A stretch of DNA of 64,000 bases. Source: Tetramitus jugosus. Taxonomy: Eukaryota > Protista > Heterolobosea. A program made the position numbers and the translations under genes. Every line of letters begins with the position of its first letter. The first letter of the stretch is position 1. Positions 21,923 through 28,310 of this stretch are shown in pieces. The stretch lies in NCBI GenBank assembly GCA_937625935.1, contig OW569360.1:434001-498000 (forward strand), given 5' to 3'. The notes beneath the pieces are model-generated. The model made no database searches, was not told where the DNA came from, and saw only the letters and a program-made list of their open reading frames with translations.

Positions 21923-21981
21923 CCACCCAGCAAAGCGTGGATTCTCATACTCACGAACAACAGAGGTGTGTTCGTTTTTTC
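21923..21981 (+). repeat. 59-bp block (copy 1) upstream of tRNA-Ile, containing a hairpin and T-tract
   Basis: 57/59 identical to 28049-28107; ACGAACA...TGTTCGT stem (21953-21975) followed by T-run. Confidence 0.9.
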
Positions 21982-22038
21982 GTTTTCGAGGACGAGTGCC
22001 GCCATCAAGTTCGTCCAAAATGGAAAATCTAAATAGAA

Positions 22039-22111
22039 GGTCGTTTAGCTCAGTCGGTAGAGCGTTGGTCTAATAAGCCATTGGTCGCAGGTTCGATCCC
22101 TGCAACGACCA
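22039..22111 (+). tRNA. tRNA-Ile (anticodon AAT), copy 1
   Basis: Cloverleaf: acceptor GGTCGTT/AACGACC, D arm GCTC/GAGC, anticodon loop CT-AAT-AA, T arm GCAGG-TTCGATC-CCTGC; T-run terminator follows. Confidence 0.97.
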
Positions 22112-22267
22112 TTCGTTTTTTCCTCTCTGCGTTTTGTTTCCGAATTCTTAAAATTCCTATCAGTGCTGCCACAAGGGCAACTATCAACTTATTCTGCTCA
22201 TAACCTATCAATGTCTCTTATTGTCAGACCAACAATACATCTCCACTTTGATAACAACTCTGAACTC

Positions 22268-22752
22268 TATGGAAACGTCTATCTGAAACGAATTGGGATG
22301 TCATCGGAACGATTTTGGGAGCTCAACAACGAATAATGTTGTAACCTGAATTTGCTGGAAGCAGTCATCAAAGACAGGGACAGGTCCAGCAATTGCTCGA
22401 TCAATCGATATGAAATACTCTTAATGAGTGATCAGAATGTGTCATTTCATTGCATAGGTAAATGTCAAAGGAGACAAAATATATGAGTTTGTGGATGAAT
22501 TCAACAAGACTGGAAAGATTTCACACACCGCGGCTCCCACCAAGAGAGGAATGGACTCGGAGAAGAAACTGGCGGCACACACGACAAAGCTTTGAGATAG
22601 CCAAAATGATTGGCGAGGTCTACTTGAACCAAAGGTTTAGCCATTACTTCAGTCCCGGTAAGTTTATCTCCATTGATGAAGGACTGATCGAATTTACCGG
22701 TAGGTATTATTAGAAGCATTTTATTCCCACAAACCTGCTGGAGAAGGTATTA
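22268..22752 (+). mobile_element. piggyBac (DDE_Tnp_1_7-type) transposase relic
   Basis: YGNVYLKRIGMSSERFWEL (22268-) and FSPGKFISIDEGLIEFTGRYY*KHFIPT, continuing after a 1-nt frameshift as (K)PAGEGI. These match piggyBac MSxxRF and PGxxxxIDExxxxFxGR..KP motifs. Contains stops and frameshifts. Confidence 0.85.
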
Positions 22753-23316
22753 TGGATACTGAATGTGCCTATCGCTTTCATCGTAAATTATTGGATGTAA
22801 GACACAATAATCAACAAATTACTTTTGAGAAAATGTGTGTTTATGAATAAATGATTGTATTTTGATAGTAATTGTTAAGTAATTATATATTGGCGAATTC
22901 CTTCACTATGAATGGTCTTGTGGACACGTATGTCCTTCGGCCAATTTTCAGCACATTTCTGAGTATAATTTGCATGAAGTTGTAAGAGATATGTATGCTG
23001 GTTGACTCCCCAGCATGAATCCCACAGAATTCGACAAATACTCTGAATCCTACTAGACAAAGTTGAAGTTTACTGTTTGCAGCATCTCAGATTCCGGAGC
23101 ATTGCAAATACTGGTGCGCATTCTGCTTGGATAGATAAATTAAAATATAATCTGGATCATTATCACTCTCAGTTCCAGAGATCACAAATTTGGTGTTGCC
23201 CTGAACTTTCTCTCTTCCTTGCAGATTTCTCAAGTGTGTTATAATTGTGGCGTCCAGCGTCCAACCCTTGTTTGGAAGTATCTTGAACCTTCAGCGTCCA
23301 TTTTTTTAATTTGTAA

Positions 23317-26300
23317 TCAAAAAGAAAGCAAAGGGAGAGGAGCGAAACACCGAGAGCTGAGAACGGACACACTCGACAACCCAAATACAAATGCAACGGT
23401 ACAATAAATCACTTCTTCTATGAGAAGAAAGGATTAGAGAATATGTTGAAAGACATAAAGTGCAAGGAATGCATTGACGCTACTCCAATACCTGAGAAGA
23501 TTGGAAAATTATACGAATTATGCATTTGCGGTACATGGTTTGCCTACCAGCACCGAGCGAAGCATTTAGACAAGTGTGACGTAGTAAATAATCGGATTGA
23601 CACTCAGAGCAATGTATTGAATCAGCAATCTCAAAGCAATGTCCAGAATAATAGTATGACAGTGCCTCAGACGCCTGCTACATTGCAAAACACTACTACG
23701 AGTAATACAGCAGCATCTGTTAGTGCACAGAGTATCACTACTGGTGCTCGTAATGCATCGTCTGGCACAACCGTTGCTTTGAAAGATATTCCACTTATTA
23801 CGAGTGATCTGAACAAAATTGTTGTTAACACATCTTATAAGAATCAGAACAGGAATTATCTAGGTCAAATCGATAATACTCAATTACGACGGAGCAGAAT
23901 TAACGATTATTTAATAGCACTGCAGAAGTACACCAAGTGCAAAAATATTGACAGAATTATTCTTGAAACAGATATCTGCAAGAATGCTTTAGACGCCATG
24001 AATAGAAAGTCGTACCATGAAGGCGTCGTAGATGGAATTAATCTGATTAAGCAACATCTGGAGTCGGTATCTGATCTAGCAGCATCACTGATGACTGGTG
24101 CAGCATTCAACAGGTTGATTCATCTGATTACATACACACATACAGAAAAAGTGAATATGGATGAAGAAGAGTTAAAGAAACATGTTGAAGAGACAAAGGA
24201 GTCTCTGCATAAGTACTGGTATGGTTCACAGATTACTCTTGAGAGATCTGATAAGATACAGTCTCTACTTGATAATATTCCGTTGCAGGAGAAACTACTG
24301 TCTCTAATCGAGTCACATGGTGGGTATAAGAGTGTAATTGAGAAGAAAAAGTTGACTGCTGTTGCTAGAGAACTACATGAATGGTGTAAAAGACAAAGTG
24401 ACGTAAACACAGCAAATCTGTCAGACGTTTTTTCTGGTACCGCTGCTGGTAACGTTATTAAGGAATTATGTATCTTCAGAGCTGAGACGTCAGTGACAAG
24501 CAACATCAGACTAAGATCGACAAGAGCTCAGCTGGTAGATAGATACGGAGAGAAGCATAAGATATTCAAACTCAGTGATTCTCTGGAGATCAATGCACAA
24601 TCTAGATGTTATATTGTAGGTCAAGAAAGTCTTGATGATCTACCATCAGTAGTGAAGGAAGAGGAGGGAAGACTCTTTGTCTATTGGGGCGACCAGAAGC
24701 TAGATCTATTTACTTTAGCATGTGACAGAAGGTACTCCTATGTTGGAAATCTGGTGGAACAACCTAATGCAACAGGACGCTCAGTGTTAGTCAGGCATAT
24801 AGATAAACGTGTAGCATCCGCTATTCGTATGTATAGAATGTATGAACGCGATCTATGGCTTGATATTGAGAAGGGATCAACTATATTTTTGGATATGACT
24901 ACATGGTTGGATGGGTCCAAAGTTGATAAGAGCGGCAGAAGTGATACTTGCATGCAGCTGATAGCAGATCCTAGATATATGAAGACAGATGATAAACAGA
25001 AAGCTGTTATAAGAAGTCCTATTTCAGTAGGTATGACCTGGGAGAGCGAGACAACTATTATTATTACATCATTATGCGCAGTACTCGTTCAAGATATGAT
25101 TAACTTGAGTACCTTTAAGTGGACGCATCCAGATGGATTTACTGTCACTTTTACCAGAGTGTCATAGACAGTTTTTCAACGGCTTGACGCCACAAGTACT
25201 CGGAGTATCTGTTGCGTTGGGGAAGCAGCACCTTGCTACCACAGCAATTCAGAAGTATAGACAAGACAATAAGTCACTTGATATTTCTGTGGATGAAACA
25301 GAGATCACCTGCATCATGAATGAAGTTGAGCACAAATTAGAGCTAGCTACAGTTATATCGAAATTGTCTGAAGTGGATAATGATGAACGCTTGCTTGATG
25401 TATTGTATATACTTGTATATATCCACTGCAACAGAGCAAATTTAACATTGAAAGACTTTGGACCTTATACTGTTCAGCGATGCTCCGCACGCTATTGCAG
25501 GTCTCAACGACAGATTGTACAATCTATTCTGTATGGAGCAGGGAGGCAACAAGGTGATGGTTACTGATCGAACATTTGAATTGTTAGGTCTGGCAAGATC
25601 AGATATGAATCATAGTGATAAAAGAGAGTCTATACTCCGATCATTTGAGATCTATTTTGGACAGAAGCAGATTGAGACAGGACCTGTTGATACAAATACT
25701 ACGCAAGCTCCTCAGCCCTCTGAAGCATTTCAGAAAGCACTTGAAGAGCATAATACTCGATCTCAAATGGATATAGATGATAAATACGTACTTGAAATTG
25801 TCTCCAAGACCATTGATATACCAGCCACAATTACAGAAGTATCACAGAGTAATTCATTGTTACATACGAGTGACGAGGATGATGTGATCATGAGTGAGAG
25901 TACTCCGGAGAGAATCAATCCATCTCAGCAATCGAGTGATGCTAACCAATCTACATCCACCAATCCACAATTTGCAGTGCAAGAGTCAGTTGGGAATTTA
26001 ATGTGGATCTTGTTATTAATGCAATGGCTAATCAGACTATGTTCTATGTCAGAAGAAAAGAGAACAAAGAAAGAGCAGTACAGATTTCATATGGTAACTT
26101 TTCTGCTATTTGTTCTGTGCACAGATAGATATGGAGCAAAGATTATGACGAATTATTTGCATGACATCGGGATACATATGCCAAATTTGTTTGAGAAAAT
26201 AGCATTTGCAGCTGTGAATGGTGACATGTTTGAAGAGTGTTTTGCAGAGCTTAAGGTGTTTATGAGAACATCTTGTCACCGAAAGCTAGAAGCAGAGATC

Positions 26301-27104
26301 GCATGTTTTATCAAGAGAAACAAGATGGATCACTACTATATGATTCATCCATCTCAGAAGAGAAGGAAATCGAATAGTAGAATCAAAAAGTTACTTGATG
26401 AGATGCAAATCTGCAATATACTATTGACTCAGACATTTCTCAACTCCAAGTACAAGGATATGATTGATGCCAAGATATCTCAGATGAAGAAGGATCCAGA
26501 GTATGCAGATAGGTTTGTGCAAGTTGGATCTGGGATATTATTGAATTTCACAGGTGATATTGGATCACCAGTGTATTTACCATCACGTCCAATGCTTGTA
26601 GAGAAGGAGATCACTATTGCGGGAAAGATGTGTAAGCGCCATGGATGCGACTCTGTAGCTAAATCCAAGCTTTGTGATTATTGTGCTGATTGTTGTATTG
26701 GATATTTTGAATGCAGGCCAGAAGGTAAGCTTTGCAGTCCGCATCTGAAGACCAACAAAGAAAGAGATGCTGCGAACAGATCAATAGCTGCTGGCAAAAG
26801 CGAATTTACTGAAGGAAGTGTTCCTATGAAGAATCGAGCGACTAAATGTGTCAATAAGTCAATATCGGGTTCATCCTCTGGATCTGGCGATTCTGATAAG
26901 CAATCTACACATGCAGTTAATAGTACAGTTTCTATCAAATATGCTAATAAGCAAATTGGGAGAGGCGTTATCCTAAAGTTTGAGAAGGATAGAAGGGATC
27001 AATACTATGTCAAAATAACAGATCTGCAAGCTACTTCCAGTAGAAAACCGTTTGAGAAAGACGGCAGCTATTGGTTGAAATATAACAATCTGACAGTGGA
27101 TTGA
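23317..27104 (+). mobile_element. RAG1/Transib-like DDE transposase gene (~1250 codons), split by one TAG and two apparent +1 shifts at 25165-25460
   Basis: Ordered motifs: TWLDGS (D at 24910), RSPISVGMTWESE, RLD-x15-CYH (D at 25186), SDAPHAIAG (H at 25488), MNHSDKR, KIMTNYLHDIGIHMP (H 26160/26175), NGDMFEE (E 26232/26235). Zinc fingers at both termini. Confidence 0.8.
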
Positions 27105-27333
27105 CGGATCTGTTAATTTTCATGACTGACATGTTTTCGGCGTGCAGCAGTTGCTTGAGGGAGCTTGTGAGTTGTCATTGTTTTTTGGAAATATTAATGT
27201 AAAACTTTGTACCCATAATATTAATTTTACTTTCAGCGATATATGTTATAACTGCGCGACACGACAAGCGTCTTGGGACCCAAGTCATCTGTCATGTCAG
27301 GCACTGACAAGTGATGTATGATATTGATGTATG

Positions 27334-27372
27334 ACAGCACAGATTAGTGTGACACTCCTTAGTCTGTGCTGT
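27334..27372. repeat. Inverted repeat / hairpin downstream of the transposase
   Basis: ACAGCACAGA (27334-43) pairs perfectly with TCTGTGCTGT (27363-72). Confidence 0.7.
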
Positions 27373-27501
27373 AGTCTTTCACTGATAGATGTCTCCAGGA
27401 GAGGCAAGAAGGAGGAGCTCGATTATAGGACACATGAGTTGGCCATTACCTTGTCCAGAATAGCTTTAGACTAGAAATACTTTTTGGCTTTAACTACAGT
27501 G

Positions 27502-28100
27502 ATTTTGTTTTCCTCTGGTAATCCGGTTGCCGGAAGCCATTTCTTTTAACACACTGACTTGGTGGCGCAGGTCGTCCACCTTGGTACATCTTGGTCAGCC
27601 TCTTGCTGACAGGAGCACGTGGGCGTGGAAGAAAGCTTCGGCATACGTTTCAGACTCCATCTCAACAAAGGCAGTGTTGTGCTTCTTGAGCACATTCTTG
27701 ACCTTTGTTTTCCCGAGCATGGCCTTGATGTCGTCCTACGTCTTACCTTTGACTCCGTGGAGGACGACCTTCTTTGGCACAATCAACGTTGTGCTTGAGT
27801 GCTGCCTTGCAGCCACTCATCTTCTTGTTGCGGTTGAAGGATTCAACAAATGGATAAATGTTGTCATCAACAACAGTTACCCAAGCAACAAACCTCTTGG
27901 GGCCCTTCTTGATGACTTGGACCCTGGTGAGCAAATCACCAAAATCCAAGCCAATCTTCTTGGCCAAGGCAGCTTTTGGAGAGTCATCGCACTTTCCAGT
28001 GATGATGACCTCCTGGCTGCTTGGAGCAGTTCCTCTTGGTGCTGTGGTCCACACAGCATAGCGTGGATTCTCATACTCACGAACAACAGAGGTGTGTTCG
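27502..28100 (-). pseudogene. Degenerate RRM-like + zinc-knuckle-like ORF (non-LTR retrotransposon ORF1-like), truncated
   Basis: Frame 1 ...VVREYENPRYAVWTTAPRG...EVIITG...RFVAWVTV; after a frameshift near 27785: KVVLHGVKGKT*DDIKAMLG...NTAFVEMESETYAEAF...RG*PRCTKVDDLRHQVSV. Confidence 0.45.
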
Positions 28101-28107
28101 TTTTTTC
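28049..28107 (+). repeat. 59-bp block (copy 2) upstream of tRNA-Ile
   Basis: 57/59 identical to 21923-21981; hairpin 28079-28101 plus T-tract. Confidence 0.9.
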
Positions 28108-28174
28108 ATCGGCGTTTTTTGTGTTTCACCAATTTTTTCAAGTTCGTCCTAAAACCGAAATTCTAAAAATAGAA

Positions 28175-28247
28175 GGTCGTTTAGCTCAGTCGGTAGAGCG
28201 TTGGTCTAATAAGCCATTGGTCGCAGGTTCGATCCCTGCAACGACCA
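28175..28247 (+). tRNA. tRNA-Ile (anticodon AAT), copy 2
   Basis: Identical to 22039-22111, including AAATAGAA upstream and TTCGTTTT downstream. Confidence 0.97.
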
Positions 28248-28310
28248 TTCGTTTTATTTCTCGATGGCCGCGGCTACAGCTCGAAATAAAAGGATCTTTA
28301 AAGATTACCA

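What the first reader, a model, noticed from the sequence alone, without database searches (positions are those of the whole stretch)
23317..27104. RAG1/Transib-like recombinase-transposase in a protist, with RAG1 core motifs in order
Seen in sequence: the two 'hypothetical' ORFs 23443-25167 and 25458-27104 read as one protein when bridged. Established, from remembered RAG1/Transib sequences: TWLDGS resembles KESCDG/KWGCDGS (first catalytic D). RSPISVGMTWESE resembles CKPLCLMLADESD. Reading through the TAG gives RLD-x15-CYH, like Transib D-x15-CYIC (second D plus Zn ligands, 92 aa after the first D; 108 in RAG1). SDAPHAIAG resembles SIDALHCDIG, and MNHSDKR resembles MNGNFAR. KIMTNYLHDIGIHMP resembles KITNYFHKTLAHVP, with Glu at +19/+20 from the second His as for RAG1 E962. 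Inference: a divergent member of the RAG1/Transib/Chapaev clan in an apparently non-metazoan lineage. No kelch-type RAG2-like partner is visible in the island.
Basis: partly seen in the sequence, partly recalled or inferred. Interest (0 to 1): 0.9.

Follow-up and report, generated by a model that had tools for sequence, protein, structure and literature searches.

The report
Dead RAG1/Transib-fold transposase in an amoeba
This is the broken remnant of a jumping-gene enzyme, built on the same fold as the RAG1 enzyme that shuffles our antibody genes; it belongs to an apparently undescribed, very divergent transposon family in a free-living amoeba, and one intact relative was found in environmental DNA.

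Summary
23317-27104 is one pseudogenised DDE transposase. It is colinear with an intact 1,448-codon relative from a metagenome (L040). That relative's predicted core (pLDDT 65) matches only RAG1, HzTransib and BbRAG1L in the PDB (Foldseek E 3e-5; Z 11.5). The first Asp (24910), SDAPH, MNHSD, H-x4-H and Glu (26232) are conserved across the family. Strain alleles decay neutrally. About nine more decayed copies, in two old subfamilies, lie on other chromosomes. No TIR, TSD, RSS or RAG2-like gene was found. CACTA, Plavaka and DUF1280 clusters score nearly as well as RAG1, so membership is shown only for the CMCT clade, not for Transib or RAGL. The host matches the heterolobosean Tetramitus jugosus by assembly statistics. 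First readers flagged three other copies in this genome. Protist RAG-like elements are already published (Aureococcus). What is new is a divergent lineage with a ~125-aa inserted domain.

The parts
23317..25164 (+). 5' piece of the transposase pseudogene (616 open codons): N-terminal Cys/His fingers, helical region, start of the RNase H core
   Evidence: matches L040 aa 183-629, E 4e-95; paralogs on C18, C1, C24; N-terminal CxC-x-W-x6-H pattern shared with L040 and the C1 copy
24904..24918 (+). WLDGS, first catalytic Asp at 24910
   Evidence: aligns with WMDGS / WLDGT / WHDDS / WQDGA of relatives; ends a beta strand in the L040 model
25015..25047 (+). SPISVGMTWES, third-strand motif of the RNase H core
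   Evidence: aligns with TPLSTQIIW, NPLSICITW, QPLPIIFGV
25154..25155 (+). junction of an approximately 310-nt deletion that removed the family's second Asp (ADNK), the CxxC zinc ligands and the GLxR motif
   Evidence: 292 vs 594-612 nt spacing and frameshift-aware alignment to L040; a groundwater strain's contig matches to 25154 and then runs on about 306 nt unlike the window; unitigs of the source sample also break at 25154
   Evidence: no frame scores above shuffles against the family profile; single copy in the assembly
25253..25468 (+). middle piece in a third frame: distal half of the family-specific inserted domain, ending VYIHCNR...DFG
   Evidence: matches L040 aa 780-840, E 4e-6; IYLHFNR motif in L038, C18, C24
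25470..27104 (+). 3' piece of the pseudogene: SDAPH (25476), MNHSDK (25605), low-complexity insert (about 25680-25980), H-x4-H (26160, 26175), catalytic Glu (26232), Cys-rich finger (26631-26744), C-terminal beta domain
   Evidence: matches L040 aa 843-1274, E 3e-102; invariant columns; C-terminal alignment
22400..22760 (+). context, not part of the gene: piggyBac-type transposase relic
   Evidence: PF13843 E 0.002; about 24 related fragments in the genome
27517..28120 (.). context, not part of the gene: high-copy dispersed repeat lying about 50 nt upstream of tRNA genes
   Evidence: at least 40 near-full copies at 82-97% identity; 3 of 5 other copies lie 45-55 nt from a tRNA gene
22039..22111 (+). 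context: tRNA-Ile(AAT), left
   Evidence: identical to the right copy
28175..28247 (+). context: tRNA-Ile(AAT), right

Best explanation
The stretch is the dead coding sequence of a single-ORF (about 1,370-1,450 aa) cut-and-paste DNA transposase of the CMCT clade (CACTA/EnSpm, Mirage, Chapaev, Transib, with RAG1, Plavaka, ESTA, Lanisha). It belongs to a divergent lineage with no sequence-level match to any named superfamily. How the intact enzyme most likely works. Shown by alignment and fold: an RNase H core with D548, D637 and E1072 (L040 numbering), interrupted by a zinc-binding insertion with CxxC (655-658), xDxxH (H851) and H-x4-H (1048, 1053), as in RAG1 and Transib. Inferred from the clade: a homodimer binds short terminal inverted repeats starting CA(C), nicks, forms a hairpin on the flanking host DNA, and inserts with a 2-5 bp target duplication, without a RAG2 partner. 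Inferred: the N- and C-terminal Cys/His fingers help bind the ends or chromatin. The window copy lost its second Asp and CxxC in a deletion of about 310 nt, has further frameshifts, has lost recognisable ends, and drifts neutrally. It does nothing now.
For: Fold: the top 48 Foldseek PDB rows are all RAG1, HzTransib or BbRAG1L (best E 3.1e-5, first unrelated 0.31). The Foldseek-independent search ranks HzTransib Z 11.5, BbRAG1L 11.4 and RAG1 9.9 first. In the ESM Atlas the best named clusters are RAG1 (0.94, 173-179 of 256 features) for both L040 and P0019, and P0019's model has TM 0.69 to a RAG1 cluster. One family member has a weak Pfam RAG1 hit, E 0.0065. Motifs are in order in two intact proteins. 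Mobile history: related pieces on about ten chromosomes, two subfamilies older than the host genome, both also present in an unrelated assembly (L038, L041). Dead state: the deletion; a 98%-identical strain allele with its own two frameshifts and a stop, and 9 nonsynonymous to 2 synonymous changes; 13:5 among the listed changes of another strain; all paralogs examined are broken.
Against: The model has pTM 0.41 and superposes with rmsd of about 19 A, so the three acidic residues were not seen together in one active site. Z 11.5 is not far above what helical bundles reach by chance (note). No TIR or TSD was found at any copy, so transposition is inferred from dispersal and protein family only. 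The PDB matches included no CACTA, Chapaev or Plavaka structure, so it cannot rank sub-lineages.
Confidence: 0.85

Rival explanations
1. The family is specifically a deep branch of Transib/RAGL, the sister of the RAG1 lineage, rather than an unplaced CMCT lineage.
For: RAG1 clusters outrank Transposase_21 (CACTA), DUF1280 and Plavaka clusters by features (0.94 vs 0.91-0.93). Single ORF without introns. Short D1-D2 spacing (87-89 aa). The D-x-K...G...CxxC pattern recalls RAG1 (from memory).
Against: The margins are small: TM 0.68-0.69 to CACTA clusters against 0.69 to RAG1, and 0.74 to unnamed cnidarian clusters. No GRP nonamer-binding motif in the N-terminal part, no Ser in the core SxxCxxC, no CCGHC tail. 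No CACAGTG/CACAATG ends. No profile hit to RAG1 or HzTransib chains. Known RAG1L and Transib cores are about 26% identical to each other (PMC9435367); this family is far more distant.
Confidence: 0.3
2. The locus is a domesticated or still functional gene whose breaks are introns, recoding sites or assembly errors.
For: Two long frames (616 and 550 codons) are still open. The lesions cluster in 300 bp. Unitigs of the source sample branch at 25154-25232 and 26834-26857, so a second, less damaged allele may exist; an alternate haplotype was deposited for the matching assembly (PMC11106597).
Against: Splicing or recoding cannot supply 100 missing codons. No splice donor. Independent sequencing reads of the source sample match the window on both sides. 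Strain alleles show neutral N:S ratios and their own new lesions elsewhere in the gene. No RNA run holds the stretch (weak evidence).
Confidence: 0.05
3. The protein belongs to another insertion-domain DDE superfamily (P element/THAP9, Kolobok, hAT, MULE) and resembles RAG1 only generally.
For: P-element transposase appears at Z 7.1. Sequence searches are silent.
Against: P element ranks 15th, among helical bundles. All top hits of three methods are CMCT members. C(2)C with H(3-4)H is the CMCT signature (PMC12730594) and is invariant here.
Confidence: 0.08

Closest known systems
Transib transposases (HzTransib, PDB 6PQN)
   Same: Best structural match (Z 11.5). Single ORF, no RAG2. D-D-E with CxxC and H-x4-H between the second D and E.
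   Different: Second D to E is 435 aa in L040 and 244 in P0019 against 206-214 in Transib (PMC1131882). About 125-aa extra domain before SDxxH. No SxxCxxC serine, no GRP. No CACAATG-type ends found. No detectable sequence similarity. Much longer protein with extra zinc fingers.
RAG1 and RAG1L (ProtoRAG/BbRAG1L; AanRAGL of Aureococcus)
   Same: Top Foldseek and language-model matches. Same motif order. Last His to Glu is 19 aa here, 20 in RAG1 (H942-E962, own knowledge).
   Different: No RAG2L gene, no RSS-like TIR, no 5-bp TSD, no RING, GRP or CCGHC motif found. Pfam RAG1 is not reached (one member at E 0.0065).
Other CMCT lineages: CACTA/EnSpm (Transposase_21), Chapaev, Mirage, Plavaka, ESTA, Lanisha (PMC12730594)
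   Same: Share the C(2)C and H(3-4)H signature. Atlas structural scores close to those of RAG1 (TM 0.63-0.69; Plavaka row).
   Different: No Pfam hit to PF02992, PF18759 or PF06918. No second (TnpA-like) gene seen. Ends unknown, so the terminal and TSD criteria cannot be compared.

Membership tests
CMCT clade of DDE transposases | RNase H fold with a large insertion domain like RAG1/Transib | tested here: met
   Tested on the intact relative L040; P0019 model. The domain arrangement is not resolved (rmsd about 19 A).
CMCT clade of DDE transposases | C(2)C motif after the second Asp | tested here: met
   Invariant in relatives. Deleted in the window copy itself.
CMCT clade of DDE transposases | H(3-4)H motif before the final Glu | tested here: met
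   H-x4-H and Glu invariant in 15 sequences; window 26160, 26175, 26232.
CMCT clade of DDE transposases | D, D and E meeting in one active site | tested here: inconclusive
   Model pTM 0.41; coordinates are not returned. The window copy lacks the second Asp.
CMCT clade of DDE transposases | CA..TG termini and 2-5 bp TSD | tested here: inconclusive
   No inverted pair above shuffles around the window, C18 or C1 copies. The copies are old; the L040 contig ends 21 nt before its ORF.
Transib superfamily | RSS-like TIR (CACAATG/CACAGTG heptamer) and 5-bp TSD | tested here: not met
   No heptamer in 22120-28170. The candidate pair 22904/27501 has 6/20 identity and no TSD. Decay could have erased them.
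Transib superfamily | SxxCxxC in the core and second D to E spacing of 206-214 aa (PMC1131882) | tested here: not met
   HLRCKHC and NLRCGKC; spacing 435 and 244 aa.
Transib superfamily | Significant sequence similarity to Transib/RAG1 core | tested here: not met
   No hit to PDB chains by phmmer or profile. Pfam RAG1 best E 0.0065 in 1 of 32 rows.
Transib superfamily | Groups with Transib/RAG1 in a transposase phylogeny | not testable with these tools
   No reference sequences of these superfamilies could be obtained by tool.
RAGL transposons (ProtoRAG, AanRAGL) | Linked RAG2-like (kelch-PHD) gene inside the element | tested here: not met
   No such ORF in the island, or by inspection of ORF starts near the C18, C1 and C24 copies, or on L040 (short contig).
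RAGL transposons (ProtoRAG, AanRAGL) | GRP nonamer-binding motif and CCGHC C-terminal tail (PMC10462144) | tested here: not met
   none in the window pieces or P0019. The single GR[PK] match in L040 lies inside the insertion domain.
RAGL transposons (ProtoRAG, AanRAGL) | Nick-hairpin cleavage of its own ends | not testable with these tools
   Needs biochemistry on an intact member.

The most novel reading that the evidence does not exclude
The family is an early-branching sister of Transib+RAG1 that survives in Discoba and other microbial eukaryotes and still has intact members (L040, P0019). Its approximately 125-aa inserted alpha/beta domain sits inside the zinc-binding region, near where RAG1 takes up RAG2, and does in cis part of what RAG2 does in trans. 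It would then be a living model of the RAG ancestor before RAG2 was acquired.
Probability: 0.15. Interest if true: 0.8.

Novelty: new variant of a known kind. Interest (0 to 1): 0.45.

Why it matters
The origin of RAG1 is argued from Transib and RAGL elements that are 26-37% identical to each other (PMC9435367). Outgroups between them and the CACTA/Chapaev/Plavaka groups are scarce. This family is invisible to Pfam and to profile searches of the PDB, comes from Discoba (not mentioned in the searchable supplements of the 680,000-genome RAG survey), and has intact members with a new inserted domain. It could help root the CMCT tree and test which RAG features (hairpin chemistry, 5-bp TSD, heptamer ends) are ancestral. 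The window copy itself is a dead relic of no function; its value was as a lead to the family.

Tried and rejected
Pfam, PDB-sequence and single-sequence database searches of the window pieces gave nothing. Pfam RAG1 against the own genome gave nothing, and its control did not ring either. Single-sequence AlphaFold of P0019 failed (pLDDT 36). Word-seeded searches with P0019 and A5 returned only their own members. Scans of viral contigs, of bacterial and archaeal genomes and of viral structures found no relative, so there is no sign of a viral or prokaryotic carrier at that sensitivity. An intron or recoding reading of the lesions was rejected. RLD-x15-CYH as D2/zinc ligands was rejected. A frame-0 reading of 25158-25277 looked best against L040 but was not significant against the family profile, so the frame is left open. 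RSS-like ends at 22904/27501 were rejected. The tRNA pair as an att-type integration scar of this transposase was not supported: paralogous copies have no flanking tRNA pair (one tRNA-Asp near the C26 fragment), and the duplicated block includes the end of a separate tRNA-associated repeat. Alignments A1, A6 and A8 misplaced fragments and were not used for folding.

Full report
Setting. The window is C17:434001-498000 of a 26.35-Mb assembly in 56 contigs. These figures, and a longest contig of 0.70 Mb, match the heterolobosean amoeboflagellate Tetramitus jugosus (26.3 Mb, 55 scaffolds plus mitochondrion, longest 0.7 Mb; PMC11106597). This is an inference from assembly statistics. The finding lies in a 6.1-kb stretch between two identical tRNA-Ile(AAT) genes. 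The stretch also holds a piggyBac relic and a separate high-copy repeat.

Checking the observation. Neither ORF matches Pfam or a PDB sequence. Searches of the own genome found related pieces on C18, C1 and C24, and fragments on C44, C2, C26, C45, C49 and C28. The three copies I read in full are broken by stops and frameshifts. A profile of the H-x4-H...E block of three copies found 23 proteins among 1.84 billion representatives, one of them a spurious repeat protein. They include a 917-aa open protein with a SAP domain (P0019) and a close relative with a single stop (L038). The same profile found a metagenomic contig, L040, with one open frame of 1,448 codons that is colinear with the window gene from end to end. 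So the two ORFs are one gene.

The middle motif is wrong. In all relatives the second Asp sits in (A/W)DNK-x-AN...GK...GG...RCKxC. The window has no such motif in any frame. Between HPD and Y.H.NR the window has 292 nt where four relatives have 594-612. A frameshift-aware alignment to L040 opens one long gap right after 25153. Independently, a contig of a groundwater strain follows the window up to 25154 and then continues for about 306 letters unlike it, and unitigs of the source sample break at the same base. I read this as a deletion of about 310 nt that removed the second Asp, both cysteines and the GLxR motif. The strain's extra letters were not shown, so their content is inferred. The frame of the leftover 25155-25290 could not be fixed. 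A further frame change lies near 25468. A second loss near 26835 probably removed a Cys-rich module that L040 and L038 carry.

The copy is dead. A 98%-identical allele from another strain has two frameshifts and a stop of its own, with 9 nonsynonymous and 2 synonymous changes. The listed substitutions of the groundwater strain in ORF1 run 13 to 5. These ratios are what neutral drift gives, though the counts are small. No RNA run holds the stretch, which is weak evidence. No terminal inverted repeat or target duplication stands above chance here or at the C18 and C1 copies, and no RSS heptamer lies in the island.

What the intact protein is. AlphaFold2 on the L040 core with a 32-row family alignment gave pLDDT 65 and pTM 0.41. 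Foldseek against the PDB returned RAG1, HzTransib and BbRAG1L in all of the first 48 rows (best E 3.1e-5; first unrelated row 0.31). The independent aligner ranked HzTransib (Z 11.5), BbRAG1L (11.4) and RAG1 (9.9) first, with P-element transposase at 7.1. The rmsd of about 19 A shows that the domains are mis-docked in the model, so the active-site geometry was not verified. In the ESM Atlas the best named neighbours of both L040 and P0019 are RAG1 clusters (0.94). The Atlas model of P0019 has TM 0.69 to RAG1, 0.68-0.69 to CACTA Transposase_21 clusters and 0.74 to unnamed cnidarian clusters. Motif positions in L040 are D548, D637, C655/C658, H851, H1048, H1053 and E1072; in P0019, D324, D411, C429, H507, H631, H636 and E655. 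C(2)C with H(3-4)H between the second Asp and the Glu defines the CMCT clade (PMC12730594). The subfamily of the window has two insertions relative to P0019. One is about 125 aa between GLxR and SDxxH, confidently modelled as a small alpha/beta domain (model residues about 290-360, pLDDT 71-90). The other is a low-complexity stretch after MNHSD.

History. On the H-x4-H...E block the window copy groups with L040 and L038, while the C18 and C1 copies group with L041 (100/99). The two subfamilies are therefore older than their stay in this genome, and both also occur in assembly GCA_037189345.1, whose organism I could not identify. No relative was found in viral contigs, prokaryotic genomes or viral structures. 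The tree holds no reference superfamilies and says nothing about the position within CMCT.

Mechanism. Shown: a DDE/RNase H core with a RAG1-type zinc-binding insertion, a single ORF, dispersed copies, no RAG2-like partner. Inferred from the clade (RAG, BbRAGL and HzTransib cut by nick and hairpin and make 5-bp duplications, PMC10462144; CMCT ends are mostly CA..TG with 2-5 bp duplications, PMC12730594): cut-and-paste transposition by a homodimer acting on short terminal repeats. I put the clade and mechanism at about 0.85, and a place specifically next to Transib+RAG1 at about 0.3.

Works like, versus member of. It most likely worked like Transib. It is a member of the CMCT clade on protein criteria. 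It fails the tested criteria for Transib proper (heptamer ends, SxxCxxC, spacing, sequence similarity) and for RAGL (RAG2L gene, GRP, CCGHC).

Novelty. RAG-like transposons in a protist and Transib-like proteins in bacteria, fungi and plants are published (PMC9435367), so 'non-metazoan' is not new. I found no report of such elements in Heterolobosea (limited library). First readers of this scan flagged three other copies in this genome. The new part is a sequence-invisible CMCT lineage with intact members and an extra domain. The window copy is a fossil.

Steps left out. The joined window protein was not sent to any search or folding tool; its pieces were searched apart by reference, and the fold came from the natural intact relative.

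Noticed in passing
window 27517-28120 (and its last 60 nt at 21923-21981): Dispersed repeat of about 600-680 nt with at least 40 near-full copies. In 3 of 5 other copies checked it ends 45-55 nt upstream of a tRNA gene of another isotype, as it does here. It looks like a tRNA-targeted retroelement; earlier agents described such a family in this genome.
   Followed up: partly
window 21923-22119 and 28049-28255: About 207-nt direct repeat: end of the tRNA-associated repeat, a diverged spacer and an identical tRNA-Ile(AAT). It brackets the piggyBac relic and the transposase pseudogene. How it arose is unexplained.
   Followed up: partly
window 22130-22920: piggyBac-type relic with internally deleted relatives elsewhere in the genome.
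   Followed up: partly
window 25154-25232 and 26834-26857: Unitigs of the source sample break at both inferred deletion sites, and other strains run on with different sequence there. The sequenced culture may be heterozygous for a less damaged allele.
   Followed up: partly
L036:191-2944 (P0019): Intact 917-aa family member with a C-terminal SAP domain, on a gene-dense 31-37% GC contig with ankyrin and patatin genes. The host (protist, giant virus or amoeba symbiont) is unknown.
   Followed up: no
L011:7293-8583 (minus strand; C1 subtelomere): A second, different broken transposase-like ORF (D..H..KN and HW.G.H..C motifs, Mutator-like from memory) lies just upstream of the C1 copy, near the TTTGGG telomere repeat.
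   Followed up: no
L040:3610-4365: The C-terminal part of the intact protein holds a SHI/DUF702-like Cys finger, a CXC-like module and a small beta domain (patterns from memory; no Pfam hit).
   Followed up: partly
L042:10654-12330: A kelch-repeat gene lies 4.3 kb downstream of a 109-aa family fragment in another eukaryotic contig. Two unrelated genes lie in between; probably chance.
   Followed up: no
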